From the NCBI RefSeq assembly GCF_006345805.1, contig NC_043001.1:80724001-80788000 (forward strand): a stretch of DNA of 64,000 nucleotides, written 5' to 3'. A program made the translations under genes and the position numbers. The stretch comes from Octopus sinensis. Its lineage: Eukaryota. The notes under the pieces were generated by a model that was not told the DNA's origin, did no database searches, and saw nothing but the letters and a program-made list of their open reading frames with translations. Numbering within the stretch: the stretch's first letter is position 1; each line of letters opens with the position of its first letter. Of the stretch, positions 40,830-64,000 are shown one piece after another.

Positions 40830-40860
<31 letters not shown>

Positions 40861-42509: not shown

Positions 42510-42543
<34 letters not shown>

Positions 42544-42762
42544 ATATATATATGCACGTGCATGCACACACACACACACACACTTGTATGTATGTATGTA
42601 TGTAAATATGTTTTTAAAAATGGTTATATTCTTATGTTTGAAGTCTATACAGTCATCTGACAAGAACAGTTCCTTTCAAATTGATGTAATGTTTTCATTA
42701 ATCAATTAAAGGAATTGCTTGAAACAGCCGTAATGAATTGACACCTGTACATCTTTGTTACT

Positions 42763-42795
<33 letters not shown>

Positions 42796-45162
42796 CATAC
42801 ACACTCACACAGGCTTCTTTCAGTTTCCATCTACCAGATTTACTCACAAGGCATTTCCTTTTTGTACTTCCTCCTCCCACTGACCTTATCTAGTTGGGTG
42901 GTCCCTCTCTCGCAAGAGCTAAGTAAAATTCCATTTCAGAAAGCTAGAGAGAGAAGGCATTTGCTGTTGATATATCAGAAATGCTCAAGCTCTGCTTTTT
43001 GCTAAACACCACCAATAACATTTGTGTGAGTATGTTACCAGTTCTGGGAGTGTGAAAATGGCATCTGTGATGCTCCCTTGTATTAGTGGATCAGAGAGGA
43101 GTGCTTAGTCTGTCTGTATACTTTTCACATAAATAAAAAAGTAAAAACAATCTTGAGTTGACCTGTCTCTGTGTACCTGACTGACTTCTTCTCATACCCC
43201 CACCTTAACATTCATATGAACACACACACACATACATACATGCACCCTCTTACACTACTTCAGATCTTATGTTGTATTCAACCATCCCATCTCCCACTGT
43301 TTTTGGAGTGTGTTTGTCCTCTTCACAACAAGCCTTTCATCTTTTCATCCCTCAGTTTTACAAAACTTCTTTCCCCACTCTATTACTAATTCTTTCTTCA
43401 TCTGTTCCCCCACTAATTCTCCTATCTTCAAAGGCACCACTCCTTCTACACCCCAACCTTACTGCTGCCACCTTCCACTCCAATTTCTCATTCATTTTTG
43501 TGTGCACCTTTTTGCTTTTTTGTTGTGTGTGTGCTTCATTCAAATTAACATCTTAAAAGCTAGTGAACACTCTCCATTGGTTGTTTCATTGGGTCTCATT
43601 TGTTTTTGTTTTTATTGTTCAAATTCTGGATAGCTCTGAACCAGCAGGTATCAATCATAATGATTAAAGACATGCCAGCCATGATCATCAAACCTGAATT
43701 TTTCAGAAATAGGCACTGGCATGTTGTGTGGTTATAAGAAGCTTGCTTTGCAACCACTGATTTCAAGTTCAATTGCCACTACTGCTCAGCGTCATCAAGA
43801 GGTTTCTTTTACTATAGCCTTGAGCTGCTCAATGTCTTGTAAGTGATAGACAAAAAGCTTTGTGGAAGCCTATCATGGTTAGGGTTAGCCTGTATGGTCA
43901 CAGTCCAATGACTAGTAAAAGATTGTGTGTGTTTGTATCATTTAGCTTTTACACCCATGGAAGGCAGATGTTAAACAATGATGATTTTTCAGTCAAAGAA
44001 GGGATTTTGTCACATGAATCAACAACAGCACTTTACTCTTTTAAAGCATAGTATTTGTGCTGAACTGCTAAGTTATGATAACATAAACCAACCAACACTA
44101 GTTGTCAAGTGGTAATGCTGATCAAACACACACACACACACACAATGGGCTTCTTTGTGTCCATTTACAAGGCTTTGATTGGCCTAGAACTATAGAAGAC
44201 ATTTGCCCAAAGTGCCACACAGTAGGACTGAACCTTGAACTATGTGGTTAGAAAGCAAACTTCTTACCACATAGCCATGCTTCAGAAAAGAAATTTATAA
44301 TTTGGCAGTTGAAATAAAGCCACATTTCCTCTCTAAATACCATAATTGGAAAAGACAGAAAGGAGAAAATGACAAAGAGGAAGCAGAACAGCAAAAAAGA
44401 AAAAAGAAAAAAGAGGTAAAAATTTGAAGATAGCTTTAAGCACAAGAAGAGGATGTTTGAAAAAGCTAAGAAAGTGAAGAGAGAGTTTATTAAAAAAATG
44501 AAATAGGGTGGAGCGGAGAAAATTATAAGAGATTATATTGAAGAGAATAAGGCGGTGATTTCGTGTATAAAAACATTAAAGATGTCATAACAGTATGAGT
44601 TTCTGTGTGTGGCGTGTAGAATAGGTACCTTTTCCTTATGTGCCAATGAGTAAATATATATATATATATATATATATATAATGTGTATATGATTGAAAGA
44701 GTGCTCGAATAAATAAGAAAGAATATGTGTGTGTCTGTCTGTTTTCCTTTTTTTTTTTTTTTGGTTGCATAGAAGTGAGTGAATCTGGGAGGAAAAATAC
44801 AAGGAGTAAAAAATCCATCTCTTTGTACGTTCGCACTTGTGTATATATGCATATATGTTTAAGTGAGAAAGATATCACTGAATAAAGAAATAGAGAGAGG
44901 GGGGGAAGAGAATGTAAAGAACCTCTGTGTGTGTGTGTGTGTTATTTCTGTGTCTCCTCGCACACAATGCACTTAATATAACAAGTTTACACTGTGGGTA
45001 GTAAGTCAGCACATTTAAGTGTAGTTCCCAAGTGTCTTCTTCTATAGACACAGGCTGAGCAAAGGCTTGTGAGTGGATCTGGTACACGGAAACCAAATGA
45101 ACCACCTCTCTTTTTCTCTTTCTCGCTCTCTCTCTTGTGTGGTTGGAAAGGAAGCTTCTTAA

Positions 45163-45378
45163 CCCTTTTAGCATTTAAACCAGCGATATCCAGCCAAAAT
45201 ATTCTCTGTTTTATGTTCAAACTGGCCAGATCTGGTCTCTCACACTTACCCTACATTGTCATTCTAAAAAATTAAGTTACTTCATCAAAGTCTCATAGCT
45301 ACAAGATAGTGTATGATTAATTCAAAACAATGGGAATAAACAAGTATTACTATTGACAGTAATGTACACACTAAAAAG
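45163..45378 (+). mobile_element. piggyBac-like MITE with TTAA flanks
   Basis: TTAA-CCCTTTTAGCATT at the left end and ACTAAAAAG-TTAA at the right. The same family recurs at about 48105-48697 (minus, split), 56620-56828 (minus), 59523-59690 (plus) and 60470-60678 (plus). Confidence 0.8.
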
Positions 45379-46014
45379 TTAATCACAGCGATGCGCACAC
45401 TCACACACACACACACACACACTCACATATATTGTGTATACCCTTGATTGTCTATGAGCATCACCATCATTCAAATGATGTCTTCCATGTAAACATGTTT
45501 GGCTATGGTGAAATATTACCTCACTTGGAAATATGTAAAGATTGGCATTCAGCTGCAGAAAATCTGCTTCAACTAATTTCATCTGATCCCCACAATCATG
45601 GAAACATGGATGTTAAAATGATGATGATGAATGAACCGAAGATCCACAAGTCAATACCCTTCCCAGCTTGTGCAAAATTTGGAAGGAATTTCTGTTTAAG
45701 TTTTAATCCTATACTTTCTTTTGTTAGAAATAATTGTTATATTGTAGTCAACCTACTCGAGCTGCAGTTTAACAACTATGTCTTGTCTAAATATAGAGCT
45801 TAACTAAAGGCACTGTAGTTATGACAAATCTACTTAAAGAAGTTCCTGTTGGCAAAGCAGGTTATTTTTGTAGGAGTTAGGTGTTTTCCGCTAACTGTTG
45901 ATTAATAGGAAGCCATGATAACTTCTGTTGAAGTAGGTGGGTAGACAGTGTAAATGTTGGCGTCAGCCTCTATACTAAAGTGTAAAAGAAATCATTATTA
46001 TTCTCAGGGTGACG

Positions 46015-47375
46015 AAGGTGACAAGCTGATAGAATCATTAGCACATGGGTCAAAATACTTAGCAACATTTCTTCTGGTTTTACATTGTGAGTTCAAACTC
46101 CACCAAAGTTGACTTTGCCTTTCATCCTTTCAATAAAATAAAGTGCAAATTGAACACTGGTAGAAGTAATCAAGTAGCTCCCTGCTCCTAAAATTACAGG
46201 CCTTGTTCCTATAGCAGAAAAAATTATCAGAATAGCTGAATGGCAGAAATACTAAAATACTTTAAGTTCTGAGTTCAAATTCTGTTATAGTTGACTTCTT
46301 TATTGATATCTACAAAATATGTACCAGTCAAATTCTAAAATTAACTATACCCTTCTTACCAGATGACAAAATTTGAGAAGCAGTGGATAAAATGCTAGCA
46401 GTATATTTAGCCACAGCTCTTTTACATTTTGAATTCAGATCACTCTAAGGTGGACTTTGCCTTTCATTGTGACTGAACTGGTCACATTTGATTGACTGTC
46501 CTCTTCCTTCACACAGATTCTGGTCATGTTTTCTATTAGAAATTATGAGGCACTGAATTGGTAGAATTGTTAGGATAAAAAGAAAAATGCTTTGTTGTAT
46601 TTGTTCTGGCTCTTGGCATTCTGATTTGAAATCTTGTCTTTCCAGGGTCAACAACAAAAATGTACTTTTTAAGTACTGGGATTGATGTAATGAACTAACT
46701 CCCACCTTCAAAATTTCAGACCTTAAAAGAATTATTGTTGTTGTTATTTTGTTAACATGCTGGACAAAATGATTTGTGGCATTTTGTCTATCTTTACATT
46801 CCAAGGTCAAATTCCACCAAGGTCGACTTTGCCTTTCATCTTTTCAGGGTCAATAGAATAAGAACCAGTCAAGCACTGGAGTCAATGTAATCAATTTAAC
46901 CACTTCCATTAAAATTGCTGGCCTTGTGCTAAAACTTGAAACCATTAGTATTATTATTAAGGCGGCAAGCTGGCAGAAATGTTAGCATGCCAGGCAATTT
47001 ACTTAGCGGTATTTCGGCGGCGAGCTGGCAGAAACGTTAGCACGCCGGGCGAAATGCTTAGCGGTATTTCGTCTGCGTTACGTTGTGAGTTCAAATTCCG
47101 CCGAGGTCGACTTTGCCTTTCATCCTTTCGGGGTCGATAAATTAAGTACCAGTTACGCACTGGGGTCGATGTAATCGACTTAATACCTATGTCTGTCCTT
47201 GTTTGTCCCCTCTGTGTTTAGCCCCTTGTGGGTAATAAAGAAATAGAAATAGGTATTTCGTTTGTTTTTATGTTCATTCCACTTAGGCCAACTTTGCCTT
47301 TCATCCTTTTGAGGTCAATGTAATCGACTAGCCCCTTCCCCCAAAATTTCAGGCCTTGTGCTTATAATAGAAAGG
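46015..47375 (+). mobile_element. Head-to-tail train of about 7 SINE-B copies
   Basis: Successive copies start near 46015, 46235, 46362, 46548, 46760, 46961 and 47016, all in the same orientation. Confidence 0.8.
47016..47251 (+). mobile_element. Very young full-length SINE-B nested in an older SINE-B
   Basis: Intact head ggcggcgagctggcagaaacg, about 18 CpGs, and TSD GGTATTTC at 47008-47015 and 47252-47259. Confidence 0.92.
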
Positions 47376-48237
47376 ATTATTATTATTATTACTGCTACTG
47401 TTGTGCCACTAAAAAATAATTTGTGTTGCTTTCACAGTAATAGCTGCTTTTAAGCTCTGACAGTTGAAATACTTGCTTATACATTCACACACACATTAAG
47501 ACTTTGACATACGCTAACGCATTCATCCTAAATGTAATGGTTCCTCAAAATTTAGAAGATAATATCTAGTTTACATTTCATCATATCTTTTTTTAAATTC
47601 TTTTACTAGCATGGCTACTTAGACAGAAAGAAATCCAGGTTTCACGTTTTCTTTCTGGTCTTTTTTATACTATTTAAAAAAATTTTTGTTTCCACTTGAA
47701 ACAAGAATAAACATAAAATTTCCTGAGATTCCGTTTGCCATTGTCATCTGAAACAGTCTGAATGTCTGTCAAGTTGTTGCTGCCAAGATGACTAGGCATC
47801 GCTGCCAAAGTGGTTATTTCTCTTTTTAATTAGTAAGTGGAAGCTTTATGTCCTGGTTGCATAGTTAATTTGTTATTTGGTCATGTGGAATGGTAAAGCA
47901 TATTAAAGCTACATAGAAAGTAGAGTACAGTAGTTAGCGGGGATATCATTTTCAAATGCATACTTTTAGTATACTTTCTTTTCTTTTTTCTTTTTTAAAT
48001 TATATCTGTTATATGTGAGCTGATCCACATAGGAAAGTTTGTGTAAAATTTCAGTATCATACAATCATGATTATCAACTTTTATTTTAATGTTGACCCCA
48101 ACTTTTATCCTTTACCATTCAGATTATAAATCAATAATAATGCTTATTTATTCACATTGTTTTGAATTAATCATATATTATCTTGTAGCCTTGCAATTTC
48201 AATAACTTTACTGTATATTTTTAGAATGTCATATCTC

Positions 48238-48300
<63 letters not shown>

Positions 48301-49129
48301 CTCTATATATATACACCAACTTTCTCATCTATATATATATATATATATATATATGGGCTTCTTTCAGTTTCTGTCTACTAAATCCACTCACAAGGCTTTG
48401 GTTAGCCCGAGGCTATTGTACAAGACACTTGCCCAAGGTGCCATGCAATAAGACAGAACCTAGAACCATATGGCGGGGAAGCAAGCTTCTTACCACACAG
48501 CCATGCTTGTGCCTTATCCACATTGTTTTGAATTAATCAAGCATTATCTCAATAGCTTCAAGATTTCAATGAACTGATTCTTTAGTTTTACAGTGACATT
48601 ATAGGGTAAGTGTGAGAGTCTGCAACTGGTTGGTTTGAACATAAAACAGGTAGGATATTTTGGCTGGAGGTGCCTGGTTCAAATACTAAAGGGTTAATTT
48701 AGATAAAGAGTGTGGAACCTTTGGTACTATACATTGGTACCAAGTTCAGGTAATGGTATAGTTTTCAGTTTAAAGATGTTAAATTGTGTGATAGTTCTAA
48801 ATGAGTGTCACTGTCATACAAGTTTTCATTCATTTCCAATATTCTGTGAAAACCATGTTTGACCATGGGAAAGTATTACCTTTCATGGGAAATATCTTTT
48901 ATCATTTGCTTGTTTTAATTATTAGACTGGCCATGCTGAGGCATCACCTTGAAAGGTTTTAGTCAAACAAGTCAAGTCCAGTACTTATAGTTTTTATTAT
49001 TCTACCAGTCGCTTTCTGCCAAACTGCTAGCTTACAGAGATGTAAACAAACCAACACTAAGTCGTCAAGCAATAGTGGGGCTAAATACAAGCACAAAGAT
49101 ACACAAACATGTAGATACATACATATATA

Positions 49130-49360
49130 TATTTCTTTACTACCCACAAGGGGCTAAACATAGAAGGGACAAACAAGGACAGACAAAGAGATTAAGTCTA
49201 TTACATCGACCCCAGTGCGTAACTGGTACTTAATTTATCAACCCTGAAAGGATGAAAGGCAAAGTCAACCTTGGCGGAATTTGAACCCAGAACGTAACGA
49301 CAGACGAAATACGGCTACGCATTTCGCCCGGAGTGCTAACGTTTCTGCCAGCTCGCCGCC
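49130..49360 (-). mobile_element. Young full-length SINE-B inserted in SINE-A
   Basis: Reverse complement of the 47016 copy with partial CpG decay (about 13 CpGs). Confidence 0.9.
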
Positions 49361-52014
49361 TTGATTGGCTTATTTCAGTTTCCATCTACCAAATTTGCTC
49401 CCAAGGCTTCTGTTGGCCCAGGGCTGGGACTGAACCCAGAACCATGTGGTTAGGGTGCAAGCTTCTTTCCACAGAGCTATGCCTGGTGAAATATTACCAA
49501 ATGGAGGGTAGGTGGCAGGAAGTGCATCTGGCAGTAAAAATTCTGCCTCAATAAAACTCCATCCAACTCCTACAAACTAGGAAAAGTAGGTGTTATAATG
49601 ATGATGATCATCATCATATACTTAACATTTCATCTAGCCGACTTATGTTAAGTAGCTATATGAAGTATGTGCAAACTCTTGCCATGAGGCTACAAAGTTT
49701 AGGTACCAGAATAGAACCTTTGTGTCTGTACTTCAGTCTAAGGAACCAGCAGGCGCTATTCTTTATCTCTGTTTTCCACTCTCTGAACTTTCTTTGTTTG
49801 TATGCACACTTATAAACACAGACACAAATACAGGGACAATCGGTTTCTTCTCATTCTGCTACTTATTTAAGTATCAAATTTTAATACTTAAGTGGTATAT
49901 TTTGGCTGGTACCTAGTTTTGGGTTTCAATTCTGAAGGGGTGAGTGTGTGATGTGAAGGTTGTACTAGAATTTCGTCACTCATCTGTTCATTCGTTCATT
50001 TATTCATTTTATCTTTTACTTGTTTCTGTCATTGGACTGCGACCATGCTGGCACCATACCTTAAAGTGTTTAGTTGCACAAATCAGCCCCAGTACTCATT
50101 TTTATATTTTTAAAGTCTGGTGTTTACTCTATCACTCTCTTTTGTTGAACTGCTAAGTTACAGAGATGTAGACAAGGTGACAATGGTTGTCAAGCAATGG
50201 TGGTGGTGATGGGGGTGGGGAACAGAATGCAAAGATATACACGCATATATACAATACTACATGATACTGACTTATAAAAGTGTTTAGTATACTTTGTAGC
50301 ATATTGTGGTTGCATAACGAAATACTGTGTACCAACAAGTCATTAATATTGACATATCAGCTTCAAGGAATGTGTTTAATATGTAAATTGGTATGTCCAA
50401 TAACGAGGACTATAGTAGACACTTGCCCAAAGTGCCATGAGGTGAGACTGAACCTGGAACTGTGTTTAGAGTCTATAGTGATGAGGGAGGAGATATCAGT
50501 TGGATGTCTCTTTTACTTGTTTCAATCACTGAACTGTGGCCATGCTGAGCACCACTTAAAAGGATTTAGTTGAACTTATCAACCCAGGACATATCTTTAA
50601 GCCTGTTACTTATTATTTTATCAGTCTCTTTTGCTGAATCACTAAGTTACAGGGGACATAAACAGATGAACAACAGCAGTGTTCAGCTGTACTAAACTGG
50701 AGCCCAGTGCAGCCCTGCGACTTACTGGTTCCAGTCAAACCATCTAATCCATTCCAGCATGGAAAACAGATGCTAAATAATGATGATGATTGTCAAGTGT
50801 TGGTGAAGAACAAACACAATGACAGACACACACATATATGGTGGGCTTCCACACAGTTTCCATCTGTCAAATTCACTCTCATGGCATTTGTTGGCCTAGA
50901 GCTTTAGTAGTAGACACTTATCCTAGGTGCCGTGCAGTGTGGCTGAACCTGAAACCACACAGTTTCAAGTTCAAAATGAGCTTCTTAACCATAGAGCCAA
51001 TTTTATTTTTGTTTTGTTTTTATTTTAATTATATCATCAAAATTATTTTGTTACGGATAACTTAACAACTGTGTTAACACCCTGTAGCCATAACAAAAAC
51101 ACTTGCGTAACATCCTGTATTTTGATGGTCTTTTGACAAAAAACAATCAAAAAAATATTAACACGCAATGAATGCCATGATGTCATATCATGTGTGATAA
51201 AAAATATACCACACCTTCTGTTCTCATTTATTTTTATATTTATTGCGCAGAAAAATTTTGTTCATCTTTCTCGCTTCTCTTTCAAATAAAATAAAAATTT
51301 ACTGCTCCAGCATCACCACCACCACCTAAAAACAATATAATTTGGTAAAATGATACCAAAAAAATCATTTGATATTTTCATCAGTGAACTGTTATGATTT
51401 TCAACAAAAGATTCGAACAAGTGTTTATTTTCTATAATAATAATAAATAATAATAATAATAATTGTATTATTAATTGTAATAATAATAATGATAATAACA
51501 GTAAATGTTAATAAAATTTTATATTATTATATCATTATAATTTTACTTGTTTTGTGATTGCTGTTTGTTTTGTCTTTTTACATACTGTTTATTATTATAT
51601 AACATTATTATTATTATTACCATTATTATTTTCATCATTATTATTATTAGTTTTATTGTTTAGTCTTTGAAGATATCATTGTCACCTTGTTATTGCTTTA
51701 CTGTATAGAACAATGGCTGGGAAATTTAAATTGAAAGATAATTGAAAAAGTAAAAAGAAAGACAAGTAAAAAAATTAAAGGAAAAGAATAAAAAGTCCAA
51801 AGTCAGCTACTTCTCGAAGACTTTGATATAAACACTTGATAGATCTTGTTACTGGTAGTGATGATAGTGATGAAGATAATTAAAAGCAAGATTTTTATTT
51901 CATAATTTTTGAGCCAATCTATTCTAGAAGTTTATTATTTTGAATTAAAATTTTTTCTTTTTCGGCTGAAGTAACGCTGTATTCCATTCCTGATGACGAT
52001 GATGATGATAGTAA

Positions 52015-53150
52015 TAATTCCTTTCTAATATAGGCACAGGGTCTGAAATTTTGAGGTAGTTAGTTAGTTGATTACCTTGACCTCAGTGCTTGATTGATTC
52101 TTATTTTATCAGCCGTGGAAGATGAAAGGCAAAGTTGACCTCAGTAGAATTTTAACTCAAAATGTAACACCAGAGGAAATACTGTTGAGCATTTCATGTG
52201 GTGAGCTTAATGGTTCTGCCAGCTCACTTCCTTAATTCTTTCTGTGATTGGCATGAGGCCTGAAATTTAGTGAGAGGGACTAGTTAGTTACATCGACCCC
52301 TGCACTCAACTGGTATTTTATCAACCCAGAAAGGAAGAAAGGTGAAGTAGACTCAACAGGATTAGAACTCAGAACATAAGGAGTCGGAATAAATGCCACT
52401 AAGCATTTGGTCCTATGTGCAAATGATTCTGCCAGGTTGCCACTTTTTAAATAATAAAAATAATAATTTCAAATTTTGGTACAAGGCCAGTAATTTCAGG
52501 GGAGGAGTATGTTGATTACAGCAACCCCAGTGTTCAACTAGTACATACTTTATCAACTCCGAAAGGATGAAAGGCCAAGTCGACCTTGGTAGCATTTGAC
52601 AGACAAAACACCATGCTAGCAATTCTGCCAGCTTGCCATCTTTTTAATGATAATAATAATGGTTTCAAATTTTAGCATGAAGCCAGCAATTTTAGGGGCA
52701 ATGGGTTAGTTGATTATATAGACTGGTACTTTTTATTGATTCCAGAAGGATGAAAGGCAAAGTTAACCCTGGCTGAATTTGAATTCAGAATTTGAAAAAA
52801 TATCAGAAGTTTCAAATAGCCATTTTGTGACTTGCTAACAATTCTGCCAGCTTGTTGCCCTAATAATGATGGAAGGCAAAGTTGAACTCAAAACAAGAAG
52901 TCAGTCAAAATGCTGCTAAACAGTTTGCCCAGCATGCCACCTTGACTAATAATAAGGATAATAATGTTTCTAATTGAGGCACAAGGCCAGCATCTTTGGC
53001 ATAAGTGTTTACTTATTACCAATAGATCTGGTACTTTATTTTATTGATCTCAGGGGAATGAAAGACAATGTTGATTTCAGCAGGGTTTGAACTCAGAGTG
53101 TAAAAACCTGGATTGAAATAATGCTCAAATGATTCTGCCAGCTTGCAACC
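52015..53150 (-). mobile_element. Head-to-tail train of about 6 decayed SINE-B copies
   Basis: Repeated order aggcc..aaattt / atgaaaggcaaagt / ttgaactcag / ttctgccagc, all on the minus strand and separated by (TAA)n. Confidence 0.8.
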
Positions 53151-53198
53151 TATACTACTACTACTGCTACTACTATTGCTGCTACCACCACCACCACC

Positions 53199-53207
<9 letters not shown>

Positions 53208-53253
<46 letters not shown>

Positions 53254-53297
53254 GTAGTAGTAGTAGTAGTAGTAGTAGCAGTAGTAGTAGTAGTAGT
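53208..53297. repeat. (CTA)n(TAG)n near-perfect 90-bp palindrome
   Basis: 45-bp arms centred on CT|AG at 53252/53253, with one mismatch at 53279. Confidence 0.92.
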
Positions 53298-53689
53298 ATT
53301 GGCAAAAAAAAAAACAGGCGAAAATAAGTGATATGTTTGCATATAGGAATTCAAGCATGTGTACGTTTATATTTTGGTGGGGCCAGAAGGGTTTTATTGT
53401 GGTCATGGGGTGAGTGAATAAACTCTTTGGACTGTGAGATTGGTGTCTGCTGCTGTAGTCTTTTTGTATTGGGGTGAATGACACGGAGTTGTAATGTTCC
53501 TGTTGCATGAAATGATGATGAAGGAATATACCTGCACAGATGTGTGGTTAGAAGTTTGCTTCCAAACCACATTGTCTTGGGTCCAGTCCCACTCTAAGAC
53601 ACCTTGGGCTGGACAAGTGTTTTCTACTTCATCCCCAGGCTGACCAAAGCCTTGTGAGTGGATTTGGTTGGCAGAAACTGAAAGAAGTC

Positions 53690-53888
53690 AGCGAGCGGGT
53701 GAAATACTTAGTGGTATTTCATCTGCCACTGAGTTCAAATTCCGTTGAGGTCGACTTTGCCTTTCATCCTTTTGGGGTCAATAAATTAAGTACCAGTTAC
53801 ATACTGGGTCGATGTAATTGACTTAATCCCTTTCTCTGTCCTTATTTGTTCCCTCTGTGTTTAGCCCGATATGGGCAATAAAGAAATA
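53690..53888 (+). mobile_element. 5'-truncated SINE-B inserted in SINE-A with 17-bp TSD
   Basis: AGAAACTGAAAGAAGTC at 53673-53689 and 53889-53905. About 6 CpGs remain. Confidence 0.92.
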
Positions 53889-54529
53889 AGAAACTGAAAG
53901 AAGTCTATATATATATGTGTGTGTGTGTGTGTTACTATTCCCTTGCCTTGACTTTATGTGTTAGTTATAAGTGTATATCAACAACATGCAATTTGTATTC
54001 TTGATTTCCAATCTTTTGTGGAAACAGCTGTTCATGGGGAATACTACGTTATTTGAAAACAACTGAGGGTTGGTGACAGAAAGGACATCCAGCTATGGAA
54101 AATCTAACTTGAAATATTCTATCTTACCTATTGCAAAAAAGTGGATGTTAAACAATAGTGATATGTATAACCCTAAATCACTGGAGCTGTTAGGTTCCTT
54201 GAGGTTATCATTGCTCTGCAAAAATAAACTGTAAAAAAAAATCCAAGACAGTCCTGAAAAGGATAAATATATTTACTAGACTCATGAAATATGTCTTTTT
54301 TGGTTGAAAAAAAACAATAAGTACAATTTGAGCACTGGGTTGATGTAATTGACTTACCTGTTCCCCTTAAAATTGCTGGCCTTGTGCAAACATTTGAAAC
54401 CAATATTCTTACTGCAGTGATAGTTATAATGATGATAGTGATGACATAAATACCAAAGTTGTTATTAAATAGAATTACATTATGCATTTAATTTTGTTAT
54501 GAATAAATTATCTATTATAATTCTTTAAA

Positions 54530-54900
54530 TACTCTCCCCCATGTATCCCTCTCCTCCTCCTTTTTTTCTTCTCCACCTCCTCTGTTTCATGTACATTTTC
54601 CTCTTCATCTCACCACCATACCTCTCCCTTTCTTTTTCTTTTTCATTCCTTCCCTCATTATTCCTCTATCCTTCTCTCTTTCGCTCTCTCTTTTCATTCC
54701 TTTCCCCCATTATTTCTCTACCCTTCTCTCTCTCTGTCTACCTCTCCGTCTCTCTTTCTCTTTGCTCCTGTCTATTCATATCTCCCTCTCTGTTTCTCTT
54801 TCATATATACACTTTCCACTTCCATCATAGTCTTCTTTATTCATCCTTCCCTCGTCCTCCTCATTCCCACCCCATTACTACCATTTTTCACTCTCTCTTG
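54530..54900. repeat. Long polypyrimidine (CT-rich) low-complexity tract
   Basis: About 370 bp almost entirely C/T, followed by degenerate (CCA)n at about 55080-55320. Confidence 0.9.
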
Positions 54901-55497
54901 TTTTGGGCATGTTTTAATTCCAGGAACAAGTGTTATTCGTAATGGAGAAGGTTTTTATCACCAAGTTGCATCATACCCAAACACATTGCATCTCTTTGTA
55001 TATCTCTTTTACTCCTCCTATTTTTGTTACTTTATACCTTTATTATTTTTTGTTCATATTTCCCATACCATTCTGTTGCCATTCCACCCAAACCACCACC
55101 TAGACCTCCACCATCACAACCATCTCAAATACCATTAGCACCACCACCACATCCAACACCATCAACACTACTGCCTCCAACATTATCGGCATCACCTCTA
55201 CTTTCACCACTGTTGCCAATGCCTCTACCATCATGTCCACTGCCACAGCCATCACTACCACTGTGTCTACCACCATCACTTCCAATACCATCACCACCTC
55301 CAATACCACCACCCCTTTTATACTCAACCCTGACACAGCTGAAACTTTGTGACAAGATTTCTATTTATTTATTTATTTAAAAAAAAAACAGCAACATATT
55401 AAAGGCAAAGAATAGAGAAACAAGGAACTGATATTAAAAGCAAGACCTCATGAAGATCCAAGAAGCAATTTTATTATTGTTATTATTATTATTATTA

Positions 55498-55529
<32 letters not shown>

Positions 55530-56063
55530 TTCATTATTATTATTATACATTAAAACTTAGATACCCTAACAACATCCTTGGAGAGATATATCCTTGCTGG
55601 AATTTAATCCCAAAACATTAGCCTTTGGGAATCTAAAATTACTGGAGAGGCACTGCATGAATTGAATGGAATAGAAATGGCAACGTTTGGGAGGGTGTAG
55701 AGGAGGATGGTGGGAATTATTATAAGTAAATTTTTGTTTTCCTTTTTATCTTTTTAAAAGTGAGCTCTTTCATAATTGTTTGATAAACGATGCCATTTAG
55801 AAATAAATTTCTCTACCCCACTCTCACTAATAATAAATAAGGCATGGTTTAAATGGAGTTTCTTCAGATAAAATAAAATTTTTTCCTGGAAAAGTAAATA
55901 ACAAAAACAAAAACAACAACAACAGTAATACATCAAATGAATAAGATTTCCTTTTCATATTTTGTTTTTGCCATAGTCATTCCAGAGTATGAATTGCACA
56001 TTGTGTATGTATGTACATATGAATATACATTCTTCTAAATGAGCTGTTAAAATGATAATGACG

Positions 56064-56121
<58 letters not shown>

Positions 56122-56302
56122 ATGTGTGTGTGTGTAATTTTTAATAGTGGAACTTGAAGTAGATAAAGCTAGAAATGATAACATGTGGAATGTTGATTGA
56201 GAAAAGAAACTTTGGATAAAGTATAAAGATATCCATTGGACTTCATATTTCTCAAAATCTCTGAATCCTAATAATATATGTGTATCATAATGTGTGTCTC
56301 CT

Positions 56303-56372
<70 letters not shown>

Positions 56373-57905
56373 TACATGTATGTAAACATGTAGTAGGTAA
56401 ACAAACATGGCAAAGTTAACTATTTCTTTATAGATTGAAAAATAAATGATTGAACAGTCTTAATCAATTTTGAAACCTTATTGGGTTCTTGTCAAAGGTG
56501 TCTTCATCACTTAACCAATCTCAGAGAATTAAGCTGTCAATACCCTGCTGATATCAACAGCAAATCCAGTAGCTTTAGAGAATTGAAGCTAGTAATTTGC
56601 ATGCTATAAGTATTTAACACTTAATTTAACGCTTCAGCATTCAGATTATTCTGCCTTAAGTAATGCTTATTTACTTAACATTGTTTTGAATTAATCATAC
56701 ATGATGTGATTGTATATTTTTAGTATGTCATTGTCGGTTAGATGTGAGAGGTCAAATCAGGCCAGTTTGAGTTTAAAGCAAATTGAATATTTGGGCCAGA
56801 TATGGCTGGTTTAAATGCTAAGGGTCAATATCAGTGGCCTTTCAATAGGGATCTCAGTCTACACAGAATCATTCCAATACCTACTTTTCTATGCATGGGT
56901 CTGATGAAATTTTGTTGAAGCATTTTCTACCGTTGACACCAACCCTCTCCTATTTCCAAGCAGGAAACATTTTCACAGAAGATGGGAAGCAAATGGTTTC
57001 ACTTGTATGAAGGTGTATGTGTGGGCTTCTTTCTGTTTACCATATCATCTCATAAAGCTTTTGTCAGCATAGGACTATAGTGGTAGACAGTAAGATTTCT
57101 AAGCTTTCCTATGTACACAAGTTGCACAGATTTTAGCTTCTGGAGCAGGATCTAGCTCTGTAGAGATATTCCACTGGTGGTCAGTTGTACTGTATTCTAT
57201 TGTATGAACTTTTCTTTACTAGTTTGAGGATATGGCTAGCTAGATAGATTCTAATTGACCTATGGGGTGAGCAAAAGGAGTGTGAGAATTGTATTCCAAT
57301 GTAAAAAGTTTAGAGGTTACATATCTGTAAGCTTTACACAATGTCTTTTATCACATAGTAGTTTCTGTTTAGTGAACAGTTAATAGGGTTGGTGAAATTG
57401 CAATATTTGGTGAGAGATTGTTCAGTTGATTTATTTAGTTCAGATTTCATTTGTATGTTAGTCTATAATGTATGAATACACACATATTTATAACAAGTCG
57501 TAGCAGTACATTTAAATTCATATATATTTATAAACATGTATACATATACAACAGCCACACACACAAATGCACATATTGTTGTTGATGTCATAAGGATTTA
57601 TTTATAAACTTCTAAAGAATATGAAATAATTCTTTTCTGAATGGTGAAGCTCAAAGCAGATAAAATATTGACAATGGCATCTTTTATATTTTACTTGTTT
57701 CAGTCAGTTGACTGTGGCCATACTGGGGCACTGCTTTGAAGAACTTTTATTTGAATGAATAACCCCAGTACTTCTTTTTTTTAACACTGTTACTTATTCT
57801 ATCAGTCTCTTTTGCTGAACCACTAAGTTAGTGGGATATAAATACACCAACACCAGTTGTCAAGGAACAGTGGGGGACAAACACAGACACATACACACAC
57901 ATACA

Positions 57906-58200
57906 TGAGGGCATATGGCTTAGTGGTTAGAGTGTTGCACTGATGATTGCTAGATTGATTTGTATTCCTAGATAGGGCTGTGTATTGTGTTCTTGGGCAA
58001 AACACTTCATCTCGCATTGCTCTGCGATCACTTTGACACCTGATGCATGGCACACTGTGCACCTATTCAGACAACATCAATTTGAAGAAGAGAGTGAGCT
58101 AATGTGTGGCACAAACATTTGATCACTATAAACCAATCATTTGTGCAAGTCATTTGGCAAAAAGCTGAACACTCATACGTCGTCTTTGATGGGAGAGTCC
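57906..58200 (+). mobile_element. tRNA-derived SINE family D, CpG-decayed
   Basis: Head gggcatatggcttagtggttagagtgttg, CORE-like gtgttcttgggcaaaacactt, 3' end tacgtcgtctttgatgggagagtcc. Confidence 0.7.
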
Positions 58201-59680
58201 ATCATATACACATGCATGACAGGCTTCTTTCAGTTTCCATCTACCAAATCCAATCACAAAGTTTTGATCAGCCTAATGCTACAGTAGAAGACACTTGCCC
58301 AAGGTGTCATGCAATGGGACTGAACCTGGAACTACGTGATTGGGAAAGCAAGCTTCTTACCACACAGCCATGCCTGCACCTATAATAATAATATGGAGTG
58401 CTTGTACATATTTGGTTAATAAAACCTTTTGAATTGAAAAAGAGTTGAAGGCTGCTTGTAGGATGTGAACCTACATCTCCTATTGACTTGACTAGCATGC
58501 TATCAGTGGTAGACTACCTTGTCAGGTTTATAGGATATGTGGCTTTGGGTCCCAAATCCAGACTTCAACTCTTCGATCCATACGGTTATTTAACTCGATT
58601 TTTGTATGCACACATGTATGCTTGTACATATACATATGCACACACGCACACATACTTTGCATTTTTTTCTGCTGCTGTCACAATAAAGCCTCCATGTTTT
58701 TGCTGATTTTTACGTCTTTTTCCACTTAGACTCTCTTATTTCCACATAATGAAATTTGAGAGAAACGTATATTTCTTTTGGTGTCTATTTTATATATACA
58801 TAATATATGTTTTTCTCCCTATTTTTTTATGCTTTATTTTGTTCTCTTTCTACCCCATTCCTTCCACTTCCTTTCTCTCTAGATACTTGTTATATTTTAA
58901 CTTAGTTGCCTGCCTGACCTTGAAATGACAAGAAAACACCCGCCATATTTATTTCTCTTCATTCTCTTTGGCTGTTATTCAATAGTCAGTCATTCAAGTC
59001 TTTAGGAAAAAAAAGAGAAAAAAAAAGCGCAAGAAAAAAATTCACACACATATACACACTGTTATCAGCTGAAGCAGTTTTTGCCAACCAACTAATTGAA
59101 CCAGTCTCCCCTCCCTCCACTCTGAGAAAAAAAAAAAGCAAAAAGAAGAAAAAAAAAAAAGCAGACCATGCAAACAGAAGAGATAAGAGTGAATATATAT
59201 TTTAATGTCACTGATATACCTCCACTAATAATTTTTCTTTCTATATTATTATCATTATTATTTAATATTTTGTGTATTTAGTTAGCATCAAGTTTCCTTT
59301 TGTGTAAGATTATTATTATTACTGTTATTATAATAAAATATCTTTATATTATTCCTTGTACCTGATAATTTTTTTAGTATGATGGATTAGTTTAGCCTGT
59401 GTGTTTGGGGTTGGCATGAATATGAGAAAATTAAGCTATATCATAATAATAATAATAATAATATTAATAATAAGCTTCCTGTTTCTTTTCACTTTTATTA
59501 CTAAGTCTTCTCTGCTTTCTATTTTACCCTTTTGCATTTAAACTGGCTTTATCCAGCTCAGATGTTCTATCCTATGTTCAAACAGCCTCTCACACCTACT
59601 CTACAATGTTATTCTAAAAATAGCCACATCATGGAAATCTTGAAGCTACAAGATGCTGCATGGTTAATTTGAAAAATGTG

Positions 59681-59723
<43 letters not shown>

Positions 59724-60753
59724 TTAAATTGGATATGTAATCTATGTAGGTGTCTTTTCAAAACATTGTTTGCTTTAAAAAGCCACATCAGATGCCATGA
59801 TGGTTCTAAAGTGTAGGTACAGGAGGTGGTCAAACTCTGCATAAGGAGTAGACAACTACCATATATGATATATATATGTATGTGTATTGTGTGTATGTAT
59901 GTATGTATGTATGTATGTATGTGTATTGTGTGTATGTATGTATGTATGTATGTGTATTGTGTGTATGTATGTATGTATATATAGATGTATATATATATGT
60001 GTGTATGTATATATGTATACGTGTGTATATAAGCATGTATGTGCATAGACACAGATATATATGCATATATACACATACACATAATTCGTGGTGGCCTTAT
60101 GCCAATGTAAGAAATTATTACTGGAGATGATGAATTGGCAGAAAGAGTAGAACACAGACTAAAATGCTTTACATTTAGTTTCAGCACTCAAAAAATCTGT
60201 GACCTTGCACTAGTAATGGATGATGTGTTTAGCTATGACCTGCTGCAACTTGAGTTCAAATCCTACTGGAGTCAGCTTTTCCTTTGATCCTTCTAGCACC
60301 AGTTCAGTATTAGATGTGATTTAAATATTTTTAAATAATTAGCATATTCCTCTCAGTTTGTAGTAAAGATCGATGTGCCATCTTCTTTTAGCTGGGAAAG
60401 GGTGAAAAATCTTTCTCTGCTTTGTGGTTGTGGTGGAAGTAGTTGTGTGGTAGACCTTTTCAGAAAGTTTATTCCCTTAGTATTTAAACCCACCATAACC
60501 AGCTCAGATATTCTATCTGTTCTGTGTTCAAACAGGCCTGATCTGTTCTCTCATATATACTCTACTATATCATTCAAAAAATACACAGTTACATAAGTGA
60601 AGTTCTGAGCTACAAGATAATGCATGATTAGTCAATTAAAAACGATGTGTTTAAGTAATTTGAATGGTAAAGGGTTAACTGTTGAAATTGGCATCTTTTA
60701 TTCTGGCCAAGCTCTCAATTTCTTCAAGTATATTTTCGAAAGAAAGGTAAAAG

Positions 60754-60877
60754 TAGAGAGTGAGATACTGCCATCTAGTGTGTTTATTGGAAAAAAAAGA
60801 TGGATGTCAGTGGCCTAGAGAGTGAGATACTGCCATCTAGTGTGTTTATTGGAAAAAAAAGATGGATGTCAGTGGCC
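60754..60877 (+). repeat. Perfect 62-bp tandem duplication, each unit with a CTCF-like motif
   Basis: 60754-60815 is identical to 60816-60877. TACTGCCATCTAGTGT occurs at 60766 and 60828 (reverse complement ACACTAGATGGCAGTA). Confidence 0.9.
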
Positions 60878-61690
60878 TGATTGATGAGTTAGCATGGGCC
60901 TACTCTCAGTATCGTTTTCTAAGTAAGAGGAAAGAAACTGGTAGAGGGCACTTTTGATACCTTTCTTTTTGTGTAGGATTTCTTCTTCAAATTTTCTGAA
61001 TTGTAATATCTTTTATTATACCCTTGTTGTTTCTTTTTTCACTCAACATTTTTTTTTGTGCTCAGTATCTTGGGCTTTTCTAGCCAGTAATAGAAAGCAT
61101 CAGCATCAGCATCATCATCACCGATATCATTGTTCAGTAAATATTTATATAGGACACTGTAAATCAGAATGCATTAATTATCATTATTATTAAGGTAGCA
61201 AGCTAGCAGAATTGTTTGCATACTAGACAAAATGCTTTTAAGCATTACCTATTGCTCTTTACATTCTGAGTTCAAGTGCCACCAAGGTTGACTTGGCTTT
61301 TCATCTTTGCAGGGTCAATAAAAATAAGTACCAGAATTATTATTATTAGATAAATATTTATACGTAGAACGCGTAATTCAGAATACTTTATTGTTATTAT
61401 TATTATTATTGTTACTATTATTATTATTATTAAGGCAGAGAGCTGGCAGAATTGTTAGCGTGCCCAGTAAAATGCTTAGCAGCATTTTGTCCACCTTTAC
61501 ATTCTGTGTTCAAATTCTGCTGTGATTGACTTTGCCTTTCATTCTTTCAGGATCGATCAATAGAGTAAGTACCAGTTAAGTATAGGAGTCAATATAGTTG
61601 ACATTCCCACTCCTCAGAATTGTTGGCCTTGTGTCTTATAGTAGAAAGGATTATTATCATCATTATTATTATTGTATTATCATGAATATT

Positions 61691-61722
61691 AATTAAATGT
61701 TTCTTTTTCTTTGCAGGTAAGT
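61691..61722 (+). other. Recursive splice site (ratchet point) motif: 3' splice site immediately regenerating a 5' splice site
   Basis: Sequence attaaatgtttctttttctttgCAG|GTAAGT: branch-like TTAAT, about 14-nt pyrimidine tract, no other AG for about 65 nt upstream, and a perfect donor at 61717-61722. Confidence 0.6.
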
Positions 61723-61748
61723 ATGGAACAAGTTGAAGTTAAAAACCA
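61717..61748 (+). CDS. Candidate 32-nt RS-exon / alternative start exon (MEQVEVKN-, phase 2 donor)
   Basis: Bounded by the 61715-16 AG and a second donor CCA|GTAAGC at 61749. ATG at 61723, frame open to the donor. Confidence 0.4.
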
Positions 61749-64000
61749 GTAAGCAATGAATTTCTGTTACAATATTTATTTTCTTTCATGATGCAGTGGA
61801 GGGTTTTTTCTTTTTTTTATTATGCTATTAATTTCCTTCAAATGTGTGTACATGTATGCATATATATATATAGTTTACATCCAAAATTTGACAAGTTATG
61901 TGACCATTATATTTCCACATTACTTGAAACTTACCAGTATCACATTTATAAAAGGAAAAAGTGAGTAGGTACTGTATGTATGTGTGTGTAATATTGCTAT
62001 TTTACAACATTTTCGTGGATTAAGAAGTGAATGAATGGTGGTTTTACTTTACAACATGTTGAATTGTATTACATTTTGATATATTGATATCTCTGACAAG
62101 TGAATTGTATCACATTCTCATATATTGATATCTCTTGAGAGCCAACATTCCACCAGTCATATCACACCCAAAGCAACCACATAATGTTGGAGACACCCAC
62201 ACAAGACACCATACACCATCAATGGTACTTTTATGTGTTTACTTGACTTGCTAGAAATAAGTCATATCTTCATCTCATGCCTTGTCAATTTTAAAGATGG
62301 AAAACCACATTGGTATTTGTAATCCTGGATACACTATGCTTATGGTGATTGAATAAAAGGTCATAGCTGGAATGCCTCTGATCATGAATTTACTGTTTCC
62401 TGGTGGACCTTGGCTAAGCTACCAAAACTCTCAATTAAACCCACTACCACCACCATCTCTTGATAATGGTACCATTGAACACACAGTACTATTATACAGC
62501 ATAGAATTTCATCATTACCATACAAGCACTGCAATATCAGTTATCTTTTATTTATGTCAGTACTTGGACTGTGACCATGCTGGGGAACCATATTGAAGGT
62601 TTCTGTTGAATAAACTGCGTCCAGTACTTGTTTGTTTTGTAAGTCTGGTACTTATTCAATGGGTATCTTTTGCCAAACTGCTGAATTATAGGGATGTAAA
62701 CAAACCAACACTAGTTAAGTGGAGGTGGGAAAACACACACACGCACACATATGATAGATGAGGTTCTGTAATTTCTTGCTGAAGAACCTGATCAGATGGT
62801 TTGTTTATATTCAAATGTTTGTGCTGTATGTTAGCTAACTAAGTTCATCAAATCCCCTGCCTGTACAAGTGTAGGGTGTGCCACAGGTCAGATGTTGAAG
62901 TGATAGCAATGTAGCATGAAATGAAGTATTTTGATCAAGAACACAATAGTCTACTTATCCTGGGAATCAAAACCATGATCTGAAGACTGTGAATCCAACA
63001 TCCTTAACCCCTAGGCCATATACCATTTCTCTCTGTCTTTCACATGCACACACACACACTGAGGATCCACAGGTTTTGTCTACCAAATTCACTCACAAGG
63101 TATTAGTTAGCCTGGGGCTATAATAGAAGGCACTTACCCAAAGGTATCGCACTGTGGTACTGAACCCAAAACCATGTGGTTCCAAAGCAAGCTTCTTAGC
63201 CACACAGCCATGCTTGCACCTATTAGCAATATACAATCAATTACACCATGGGACACAACACTTGCAAACCACTTCTCCATGACTATAACTATTTGGAATC
63301 TTCTACACCACATTTTTATTTTGGACACCTACATTTTAATGATATCCATCTATCCATCACTATTCACTATTCCTGTGAGGGCTGTTTGGGCTAGAGTCCT
63401 CAGGCACCTCCTCTGTAGGGTCCTATCAGAAGCAGCTATCATTGGACCTTTCTACTGGACTACCAAGTGTGACCAACTGGAACTATGGATATTATCCAAC
63501 CATTTACTATGGATATAATAGTCCCACCCATGCTAGCATGGAAGACAGACGTTAAACGATGATGATGATGGTAATGTTACTTTCTTCATCTACTCCTTGG
63601 TTGGCTCAGGTTGAAGAATACATCTTGGAAATCTTGCCTGTAACCACAAGCTTGTAGCACCAAAGCTATGATCTCTCAATGCAGGAGAATTAGTAGGCTC
63701 AACTTGGACAGACTCTCTGATCCCAGAGCTGTGTACCCTGTGAAGTAACACTTAGGTAACTTCAGATATCTTTTTGAGGAATCTCCAGTTTTGCCGCTTG
63801 TACTTGCCATTGTATTCTTTAATGATGCATGCTATGTAAAATATTTTAAACCTATCTTTCTATCATTGTTTTCTTCCACCAAGAATTTACAAGAAAAAAT
63901 AATTGTGAGAAAAAGGAAAGAAATCAAAATTCTATTGAAATCCATTGTTCAGTGGTAAAGTAGGAAAAATTTAAACAAACAAGGCTATTTGATTGAGATT

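What the first reader, a model, noticed from the sequence alone, without database searches (positions are those of the whole stretch)
61650..61754. Recursive splice site with a 32-nt RS-exon that could switch the protein N-terminus
Seen: an AG-free zone of about 65 nt, branch-like TTAAT, pyrimidine tract tttctttttctttg, then CAG|GTAAGT. 32 nt later there is a second donor, CCA|GTAAGC. This is the only such juxtaposition I found on either strand, about 25 kb into the putative first intron. Established: AG|GT ratchet points remove long introns stepwise in Drosophila and long vertebrate neuronal genes, and are defined through short RS-exons with a competing downstream donor. I am not aware of this being described in cephalopods. 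Inference: the candidate exon 1 ORF ends in phase 2 (..ATA AA|). Using the regenerated donor keeps the long N-terminus (MGLSMKS../MEEKSLCIK). Including the 32-nt exon gives AAG TAA, terminating that ORF, and 2 nt later ATG GAA CAA GTT GAA GTT AAA AAC CA|, which also ends in phase 2. Both outcomes feed the same downstream frame, so the ratchet point may act as an N-terminal isoform or uORF switch rather than a silent intermediate.
Basis: partly seen in the sequence, partly recalled or inferred. Interest (0 to 1): 0.85.

Follow-up and report, generated by a model that had tools for sequence, protein, structure and literature searches.

The report
Ratchet-point-like splice motif, function untested
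A near-perfect acceptor-next-to-donor splice motif really sits at 61716|61717, inside what looks like a long exon-free stretch of a methylated gene body. Whether it is ever spliced cannot be shown here, and the proposed N-terminus switch rests on an upstream "exon 1" that has no support.

Summary
The letters are exactly as described: a 66-nt AG-free zone, TTAAT, a pyrimidine tract, CAG|GTAAGT at 61716|61717, and a second donor CCA|GTAAGC 32 nt later.

**How unusual it is.** GTAAGT is the best donor of 3896 GTs on the + strand. The acceptor ranks 3rd of 3287 AGs. The combined score is 26.8 bits against 18.2 for the next site on either strand. Chance gives this in about 0.4% of windows of this composition.

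**New context.**
- CpG observed/expected falls from about 0.85 to about 0.2 at about 38.2 kb. So 38–64 kb looks like a germline-methylated gene body.
- That stretch holds no recognisable coding exon on either strand, which fits a long intron.
- The strand is unresolved. T>A on the + strand is only a weak hint.

**Weak points.**
- Most of the AG-free zone is the (ATT)n tail of an old SINE.
- The 32-nt exon donor is weak (6.6 bits), so skipping is predicted.
- "Exon 1" is one of 33 equivalent ORF-plus-donor coincidences and has no homologue.
- The TAA stop follows automatically from GTAAGT.

**Rival.** A 166-nt SINE-derived exon (61551–61716) would use GTAAGT as a plain donor. It is the best-defined exon-like unit in the window.

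**Verdict.** This is a credible but unproven recursive splice site (about 0.4). The isoform switch is unsupported (about 0.03).

The parts
61648..61714 (+). AG-free zone upstream of the acceptor. About 61650-61690 is the degenerate (ATT)n tail of the SINE copy that ends near 61648. The rest is unique sequence.
61689..61693 (+). Branch-point-like TTAAT, the only yUnAy match in 61660-61712. The candidate branch A at 61692 lies 24 nt before the AG.
   Evidence: function inferred
61700..61716 (+). Pyrimidine tract TTTCTTTTTCTTTG plus CAG acceptor. It scores 13.9 bits, rank 3 of 3287 AGs on the + strand.
61717..61722 (+). GTAAGT, the donor that would be regenerated after splicing to 61717. With the CAG before it, it scores 12.9 bits, rank 1 of 3896 GTs on the + strand.
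61717..61748 (+). Candidate cryptic 32-nt RS-exon. It is open only in frame 0 (VSMEQVEVKN). The other two phases give TAA or TGA stops. It contains ATG 61723 in a good Kozak context (A at -3, G at +4).
61749..61754 (+). Second donor CCA|GTAAGC. It is weak: 6.6 bits, rank 97.
61961..61966 (+). Alternative, stronger RS-exon donor AAA|GTGAGT (8.3 bits). It would define a 244-nt RS-exon, 61717-61960.
61431..61648 (+). Old SINE-like repeat copy. It is 76% identical to a young copy at non-CpG sites and keeps 1 of 21 CpGs. It is preceded by a second copy at about 61190-61345.
61551..61716 (+). Rival unit: a 166-nt exon-like segment. It runs from a SINE-borne acceptor (tttgcctttcattctttcag|G, 13.7 bits) to the CAG|GTAAGT donor. 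It is the best acceptor-donor pair in the window (26.6 bits) and has stops in all three frames.
38201..64000 (.). CpG-depleted domain (o/e about 0.2, TpG/CpA raised). It holds no recognisable coding exon on either strand and is inferred to be a germline-methylated gene body or long intron.
   Evidence: interpretation from PMC9476566
38160..38250 (.). Sharp CpG o/e step: 0.87 at 37751-38000 and 0 at 38251-38500.
36428..36519 (+). It is unsupported.

Best explanation
The site is a genuine, consensus-grade composite 3'/5' splice site of the (Y)nNCAG|GTAAGT ratchet-point type. It lies in a long intron of a germline-methylated gene transcribed on the + strand.

Proposed mechanism (inferred, not shown):
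1. The acceptor at 61716 is recognised by exon definition, together with a weak downstream donor at 61749 (32 nt) or 61961 (244 nt).
2. The upstream exon is spliced to 61717, which removes the first intron segment as a lariat.
3. The junction regenerates a strong GTAAGT donor. That donor outcompetes the weak RS-exon donor, so the cryptic exon leaves with the rest of the intron. This is a '0-nt' recursive step that is invisible in mRNA.
4. Occasional inclusion would introduce a stop or frameshift and act as a poison exon, not as a productive N-terminal isoform.

Shown: the motif, its rarity, the relative donor strengths, the CpG-depleted exon-free setting.
Inferred: + strand transcription, intron status, any splicing at all.
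For: - **Motif strength.** The motif is letter-perfect. It combines the best donor and the 3rd-best acceptor on the + strand. The composite is 26.8 bits against 18.2 for the runner-up on either strand.
- **Chance.** P is about 0.004 per window for a composite this strong. Explicit criteria give an expectation of 0.02-0.05 per window.
- **Methylated setting.** CpG o/e steps from about 0.85 to about 0.2 at 38.2 kb. SINE copies of equal divergence keep 8/21 CpGs left of the step and 0-1/21 right of it. That is the signature of long-term germline methylation. In Octopus bimaculoides such methylation marks the bodies of constitutively expressed genes (PMC9476566).
- **No exons nearby.** ORFs of at least 50 aa in 37-64 kb match no Pfam family. 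No splice-flanked ORF looks like a coding exon. So a long intron is plausible.
- **Donor competition.** The RP donor at 12.9 bits against the RS-exon donor at 6.6-8.3 bits matches the published competition rule. A 32-nt, out-of-frame exon matches the described cryptic RS-exons (PMC8605326).
[quoted passage not shown] Fly recursive sites are enriched in first introns and cut introns into 9-15 kb pieces (PMC6110457).
- **Strand hint.** T>A on the + strand across the window: S_TA 0.045, p=0.0002. This agrees with sense-strand intron skew (PMC5786239).
Against: - There is no RNA evidence of any kind, and no comparative sequence.
- The strand is not established. S_TA in the 38-64 kb domain alone gives p=0.12, and the same skew is present in the unmethylated domain.
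- A few hundred sites of this quality are expected by chance in a genome of 2-3 Gb, and the site was picked by eye.
- Vertebrate-like, repeat-rich genomes show no RP-site enrichment. This SINE-rich genome may behave that way.
- Most of the AG-free zone is a SINE tail, not a selected feature.
- Strong SINE-borne acceptors at 61313 and 61551 would compete with the site. With GTAAGT they define an ordinary exon at least as well.
- No other RP-like site lies in 38-61 kb. The upstream segment would therefore be at least 23.5 kb, the stretch from the CpG step to the site.
- The window's taxon could not be verified.
Confidence: 0.4

Rival explanations
1. Chance motif with no splicing role. The region is not transcribed on the + strand, or the site is ignored. 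The juxtaposition arose by drift next to the AT-rich tail of a SINE.
For: - At P of about 0.004 per 64-kb window, a large genome holds some hundreds of such sites.
- The AG-free zone is largely a SINE (ATT)n tail.
- The second donor is no better than about 100 other GTs on the strand. Since about 100 GTs on the 64-kb strand score as well, I estimate roughly a 12% chance of one falling 20-100 nt downstream.
- The strand is unresolved.
- + oriented SINE copies with strong acceptor-like sites are not depleted in the domain. That argues against strong selection on + strand splice signals.
Against: - The site is an 8.6-bit outlier above every other AG|GT on both strands.
- The rest of the window is, if anything, poor in composite sites: the runner-up scores 18.2 against a simulated mean maximum of about 21.
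- It sits in a gene-body-like, exon-free domain, where such sites are used in other animals.
Confidence: 0.35
2. Ordinary exon boundary rather than a ratchet point. Two versions are possible.

- GTAAGT at 61717 is simply the donor of an upstream exon. The best candidate is a 166-nt SINE-exonised, non-coding or poison cassette exon at 61551-61716. An unannotated first or UTR exon ending at 61716 is another option.
- The AG at 61716 is the acceptor of an expressed exon, 61717-61748 or 61717-61960.
For: - 61551-61716 is the best acceptor-donor pair in the whole window when no ORF is required: 13.7 + 12.9 = 26.6 bits against 22.2 for the next pair.
- The SINE consensus CTTTCGGGG decays by CG>CA to CTTTCAG|G. 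That gives strong acceptors in several copies.
- 61717-61960 pairs the 13.9-bit acceptor with an 8.3-bit donor.
Against: - The 166-nt segment has stops in all three frames.
- The pyrimidine tract right before the CAG has no role in this reading, so its presence would be a coincidence.
- 32 nt is not a multiple of 3, and only one frame is open.
- There is no transcript evidence either way.
Confidence: 0.17
3. The ratchet point is an N-terminal isoform or uORF switch between MGLSMKS.../MEEKSLCIK (36428-36519) and MEQVEVKN (61723-61748), with both feeding the same downstream frame.
For: - The frame arithmetic is correct.
- ATG 61723 has A at -3 and G at +4.
- The candidate exon lies 1.7 kb upstream of the CpG step, a plausible place for a promoter-proximal exon of a methylated gene.
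- A 'binary switch' by RS-exon donor competition is a published idea (PMC5126111).
Against: - Exon 1 is one of 33 equivalent coincidences in the window.
- It has no homologue and no Pfam match. Its donor is mediocre.
- The TAA on inclusion is automatic for GTAAGT.
- The in-phase ATG is about a 1-in-8 event by my rough composition estimate.
- The donor strengths (12.9 against 6.6 bits) predict skipping.
- The next exon, and therefore its phase, is outside the window.
Confidence: 0.03

Closest known systems
Drosophila intronic ratchet points / '0-nt' recursive splice sites (Hatton 1998; Burnette 2005; Duff 2015; Joseph 2018, 2021; Pai 2018)
   Same: - Tandem (Y)nNCAG|GTAAGT.
- A short, out-of-frame cryptic RS-exon with a weaker downstream donor.
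- A setting that looks like a long, possibly first, intron.
- Predicted skipping of the RS-exon by donor competition.
   Different: - No sawtooth, junction, lariat or conservation evidence.
- The organism is not an insect.
- The pyrimidine tract is short (about 14 nt), and the zone upstream of it is a SINE tail.
- The upstream segment (at least 23.5 kb, or 25 kb from the putative exon) is longer than the typical 9-15 kb fly segments.
Vertebrate RS-exons and the 'binary splicing switch' (Sibley 2015; Blazquez 2018)
   Same: - YAG|GT site with an RS-exon.
- Competition between the regenerated donor and the RS-exon donor.
- Inclusion would introduce a premature stop.
- A repeat-rich large genome.
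   Different: - In vertebrates, inclusion mainly marks aberrant upstream exons for decay.
- There is no expression evidence here.
Zero-length exon / pseudo-exon of rat tropomyosin (Grellscheid and Smith 2006, as cited)
   Same: An acceptor immediately followed by a donor. It can behave either as an NMD-inducing alternative exon or as a zero-length exon.
   Different: That case was shown experimentally. This one is sequence only.
SINE (Alu-type) exonisation
   Same: A decayed SINE supplies a pyrimidine tract plus CAG acceptor (61551). A nearby strong donor (61717) completes an exon-like unit.
   Different: - Here the donor lies outside the SINE, in unique sequence.
- The acceptor arises by CpG decay in the sense orientation of the repeat.
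- Inclusion is untested.

Membership tests
Intronic ratchet point (Drosophila-type recursive splice site) | Juxtaposed splice acceptor and donor matching (Y)nNCAG|GTAAGT | tested here: met
   Exact CAG|GTAAGT after TTTCTTTTTCTTTG. Acceptor 13.9 bits (rank 3), donor 12.9 bits (rank 1). P is about 0.004 per window.
Intronic ratchet point (Drosophila-type recursive splice site) | Located inside a long intron, on the sense strand | tested here: inconclusive
   The site lies in a CpG-depleted, exon-free stretch of at least 25.8 kb, consistent with a methylated gene body. The strand is unresolved: S_TA favours + over the whole window (p=0.0002), but p=0.12 within the domain.
Intronic ratchet point (Drosophila-type recursive splice site) | Short cryptic RS-exon with a downstream donor weaker than the ratchet-point donor | tested here: met
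   A 32-nt exon with a 6.6-bit donor, or a 244-nt exon with an 8.3-bit donor, against 12.9 bits for the ratchet-point donor. The rule is from PMC8605326.
Intronic ratchet point (Drosophila-type recursive splice site) | RS-exon content generally out of frame or carrying stops | tested here: met
   32 nt is not a multiple of 3. Two of three entry phases hit TAA or TGA (and direct reading).
Intronic ratchet point (Drosophila-type recursive splice site) | Splicing intermediates: sawtooth nascent-RNA profile, upstream-exon>RP junction reads, lariats starting at the RP | not testable with these tools
   No RNA data for this organism can be reached. Exact-ORF look-ups found no contigs.
Intronic ratchet point (Drosophila-type recursive splice site) | Strong evolutionary conservation of the acceptor|donor motif | not testable with these tools
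   No related genomes are available. Exact 26-mer scans of metagenome and prokaryote genome contigs found nothing.
Vertebrate RS-exon binary switch | RS-exon inclusion set by donor competition, giving a PTC-containing transcript | tested here: inconclusive
   The sequence allows it, with stops in two phases. The donor strengths predict skipping. Inclusion itself cannot be tested.
Expressed coding RS-exon (Ubx m1/m2 type) | Frame-preserving exon present in mRNA isoforms | tested here: not met
   32 nt is not a multiple of 3, and only one frame is open (direct reading). Presence in mRNA is not testable.
SINE exonisation | Repeat-borne acceptor paired with a donor at exon-like distance | tested here: met
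   Acceptor at 61551 (13.7 bits), created by CG>CA decay of the SINE. Donor at 61717, 166 nt away. This is the top-scoring pair in the window. Use in transcripts is not testable.

The most novel reading that the evidence does not exclude
The site is a working recursive splice site in a cephalopod long first intron, which I believe would be the first outside insects and vertebrates. Its RS-exon is sometimes retained, which ends a short upstream ORF at the automatic TAA. Translation then restarts 2 nt later at ATG 61723. The ratchet point would thus toggle between two N-termini, or a uORF-controlled state, feeding one downstream frame.
Probability: 0.03. Interest if true: 0.75.

Novelty: new member of a known kind. 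Interest (0 to 1): 0.33.

Why it matters
**If the site is used.** Documented recursive splicing would extend from insects and vertebrates to a lophotrochozoan with very long introns. That would support an old, bilaterian-wide origin, already hinted at by RP-site enrichment in sea urchin. It would also give one concrete locus to test.

**The practical value now.** A single motif proves little, but the test is cheap. Count RP-sites on the sense and antisense strands of long introns in annotated cephalopod genomes, and look for junction and lariat reads at this site.

**Side observations.** The sharp CpG step, and SINE decay that creates acceptor sites in a methylated gene body, show how methylation-driven mutation could seed cryptic exons.

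Tried and rejected
- **Homology for 'exon 1'.** No candidate in the 5.8-billion word-indexed library, no hit in the 1.84-billion HMMER library, no Pfam match. Two peptides from abundant repeat families of the same window, used as positive controls, also found nothing. The word-indexed negative therefore says little, and the library could not be used to name the organism.
- **The 10-aa peptide of the 32-nt exon.** Dropped. E-values are capped at 10, and 7-mer matches are expected by chance.
- **Contigs of the same or related species through exact ORFs.** Four look-ups, none on record.
- **Exact 26-mer scans.** Nothing in metagenome or prokaryote genome contigs.
- **Rfam and tRNA scans of the window.** Nothing.
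- **Search for real coding exons, to fix gene and strand.** No ORF of at least 110 aa looks coding. Pfam on all unique ORFs of at least 50 aa in 37-64 kb gave 0 families. Splice-flanked open segments gave nothing convincing. A transposase-like ORF at 13332-13853 that I suspected to be mariner-like has no Pfam match, so that label is withdrawn.
- **Strand from composition and motifs.**
  - GC skew is about 0.
  - AATAAA and GTRAGT counts are symmetric.
  - The CTAAC asymmetry (9 against 32) probably comes from a GTTAG inside the SINE.
  - SINE orientation is mixed.
  - Only T>A gives a weak + strand signal.
- **Is the motif part of a repeat?** No. 61676-61800 is unique in the window.
Full report
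**The observation.**
- The last upstream AG is at 61647-48. A 66-nt AG-free zone follows.
- TTAAT at 61689-93 is the only yUnAy match in the zone. Its A lies 24 nt before the AG.
- The pyrimidine tract TTTCTTTTTCTTTG is at 61700-13, then CAG|GTAAGT with the junction at 61716|61717.
- CCA|GTAAGC has its GT at 61749, so the segment between the two donors is 32 nt.

The frame arithmetic is also right.
- ATG 36428 to 36519 is 30 codons plus AA, followed by AAA|GTGAGT.
- Adding the 32-nt segment reads AAG TAA.
- ATG 61723 to 61748 is 8 codons plus CA.

One correction applies. AGGTAAGT occurs three more times, on the minus strand. None has a pyrimidine tract, and two lie inside a (TAGG/TAGA)n microsatellite.

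**Is it more than chance?** I scored every GT and AG with generic metazoan donor and acceptor matrices. The frequencies came from memory, so the bit values are approximate.
- GTAAGT at 61717 is the best of 3896 GTs on the + strand (12.9 bits).
- The acceptor is 3rd of 3287 AGs (13.9 bits).
- The composite is 26.8 bits. The next best AG|GT on either strand scores 18.2.
- In 250 windows simulated under each of two Markov models, the window maximum reached 26.8 bits once (P about 0.004).
- With explicit criteria (YAG|GTAAGT, at least 12/17 pyrimidines, AG-free zone of at least 30 nt) the expectation is 0.02-0.05 per window. It is about 0.003 when a second GTRAG is required 20-100 nt downstream.

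This is an outlier for a single window. A 2-3 Gb genome would still carry a few hundred such sites by chance, and the number of windows read in the first stage is unknown.

**What surrounds it.** Two copies of a SINE-like repeat lie directly upstream, at about 61190-61345 and 61431-61648. The window holds roughly 15 fragments of this family.
- Each of the two copies is followed by an (ATT)n tail.
- The tail of the second copy supplies about 40 of the 66 AG-free nucleotides. That feature is therefore not evidence of selection.
- The pyrimidine tract, the CAG|GTAAGT and the 32-nt segment are unique sequence.

**The gene-body signal.** This is the most informative new result.
- CpG observed/expected is about 0.85 from 1 to 38 kb and about 0.2 from 38 to 64 kb. 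The step is sharp, at 38.16-38.25 kb, and TpG/CpA rises on the depleted side.
- The difference is not a matter of repeat age. SINE copies with similar non-CpG divergence keep 8 of 21 CpGs left of the step and 0-1 of 21 right of it, mostly as TG/CA.
- This is what long-term germline methylation produces.
- In Octopus bimaculoides, methylation clusters on the bodies of a subset of constitutively expressed genes. One class is unmethylated at the TSS. [quoted passage not shown]
- If the window is from a cephalopod or a similar invertebrate, which I could not verify, then 38-64 kb is most simply a gene body.

That domain shows no recognisable coding exon on either strand.
- No ORF of at least 110 aa looks coding.
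- ORFs of at least 50 aa of unique sequence match no Pfam family.
- No splice-flanked open segment looks coding.

The site therefore plausibly lies in an intron of more than 25 kb.

**Strand.** It remains unresolved.
- GC skew, poly(A)-signal counts and donor-motif counts are symmetric.
- SINE orientation is mixed.
- T exceeds A on the + strand across the whole window (S_TA 0.045, p=0.0002). This is the direction seen on the sense strand of introns in flies and humans (PMC5786239).
- Within the depleted domain alone p is 0.12, and the skew is equally present in the unmethylated domain.

I take this as weak support for + strand transcription, at about 60-70%.

**The proposed exon 1.** It has no independent support.
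- The window holds 33 cases of 'ATG, at least 25 open codons, then GTRAGT'. Of these, 19 are on the + strand and 8 of those are in phase 2.
- Its donor ranks 35th.
- Its peptide has no relative in either protein library and no Pfam match.
- The word-indexed negative is weak, because two abundant repeat peptides from this same window also found nothing. That library evidently holds little from this organism.
- In its favour, the exon lies 1.7 kb upstream of the CpG step, a sensible distance for a promoter-proximal exon.
- The step would equally fit a + strand gene that starts further upstream, or the 3' end of a minus-strand gene.

**The switch idea.**
- The stop on inclusion is automatic. Any phase-2 exon joined to GTAAGT reads xxG TAA.
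- By my rough composition estimate, an ATG in the one useful frame of the remaining 26 nt, open to the end, has about a 1-in-8 chance.
- In both flies and mammals the outcome at a ratchet point is set largely by donor competition. Intronic ratchet points have the stronger donor, and their cryptic exons are skipped (PMC8605326).
- Here the donors score 12.9 and 6.6 bits. The prediction is a silent '0-nt' step with rare poison-exon inclusion, not a balanced isoform switch.
- A stronger RS-exon donor exists at 61961 (AAA|GTGAGT, 8.3 bits, a 244-nt exon). It could serve for exon definition.

- The SINE consensus CTTTCGGGGTC decays by CG>CA into CTTTCAG|G. That creates strong acceptor-like sites in several copies, which make up 4 of the 12 best + strand acceptors. 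A fifth copy gives a top minus-strand acceptor at 49243.
- The one at 61551 (13.7 bits) pairs with GTAAGT at 61717 to define a 166-nt unit. This is the best acceptor-donor pair in the whole window: 26.6 bits against 22.2 for the next.
- It has stops in all frames, so it would be a non-coding or poison exon.

**Comparison with known systems.**
- The anatomy meets every sequence-level criterion of a Drosophila-type ratchet point. It is also compatible with the vertebrate RS-exon model.
- The defining functional criteria could not be tested: intermediates, lariats, sawtooth coverage and conservation.
[quoted passage not shown] No mollusc was examined.
- If this genome behaves like those invertebrates, a site of this quality in a long intron is probably real. 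If it behaves like vertebrates, it is probably chance.
- The searchable literature holds no paper that links recursive splicing with cephalopods or octopus.

**Verdict.** My estimates:

| Reading | Probability |
|---|---|
| Functional + strand recursive site whose cryptic exon is normally skipped | about 0.40 |
| Chance motif | about 0.35 |
| Ordinary exon boundary, notably the SINE-derived 166-nt exon | about 0.17 |

The finding is a reasonable candidate for a cheap RNA-seq and comparative check. It is not a discovery as it stands.

Noticed in passing
window 38160-38250 (domains 1-38200 and 38201-64000): Abrupt step in CpG observed/expected, from about 0.85 to about 0.2, with raised TpG/CpA on the depleted side. 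It looks like the edge of a germline-methylated gene body. SINE copies of equal divergence keep 8/21 CpGs on the left and 0-1/21 on the right.
   Followed up: yes
window 4767, 46848, 61313, 61551 (+) and 49243 (-): The SINE consensus CTTTCGGGGTC turns into CTTTCAG|G by CpG decay. This gives some of the strongest acceptor-like sites in the window, so methylation-driven mutation creates cryptic 3' splice sites.
   Followed up: partly
window 46940-47200 (+) and 49180-49385 (-): Two young, CpG-rich SINE copies (21 and 11 of the 21 reference CpGs intact) sit inside the CpG-depleted domain. They appear as local CpG spikes at 47 and 49 kb.
   Followed up: partly
window 35655-35794: A 36-nt tandem repeat in 3.9 copies carries TCACGTGA (E-box palindrome) at 35739 and 35775. 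It could be a promoter or enhancer element.
   Followed up: no
window 38081-38088: A perfect CRE palindrome TGACGTCA, flanked by (TG)n, lies exactly at the CpG step. It is the only copy in the window.
   Followed up: no
If it is real, the 36.4-kb exon would not be a first exon.
   Followed up: no
window 60754-60877: A perfect tandem duplication of a 62-nt unit (2 copies, 100% identical), 0.8 kb upstream of the site. It is either very recent or an assembly artefact.
   Followed up: no
window 13332-13853 (+): A decayed ORF (108 + 65 aa, one internal stop) looks transposase-like by eye. It has no Pfam match at E<=0.01.
   Followed up: partly
window 54127 (-): The second-best ratchet-like site: caatag|GTAAGA on the minus strand, with 12/17 pyrimidines, an AG-free zone of 45 nt and a composite of 16.5 bits. 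It is far weaker than the + strand site.
   Followed up: partly
window 372-471: A run of 100 N, a scaffold gap. The window therefore comes from a scaffolded assembly.
   Followed up: no
whole window: T>A (S_TA 0.045, p=0.0002) and a 3.5% pyrimidine excess on the + strand in unique sequence. About one third of the window is repeat or microsatellite.
   Followed up: partly
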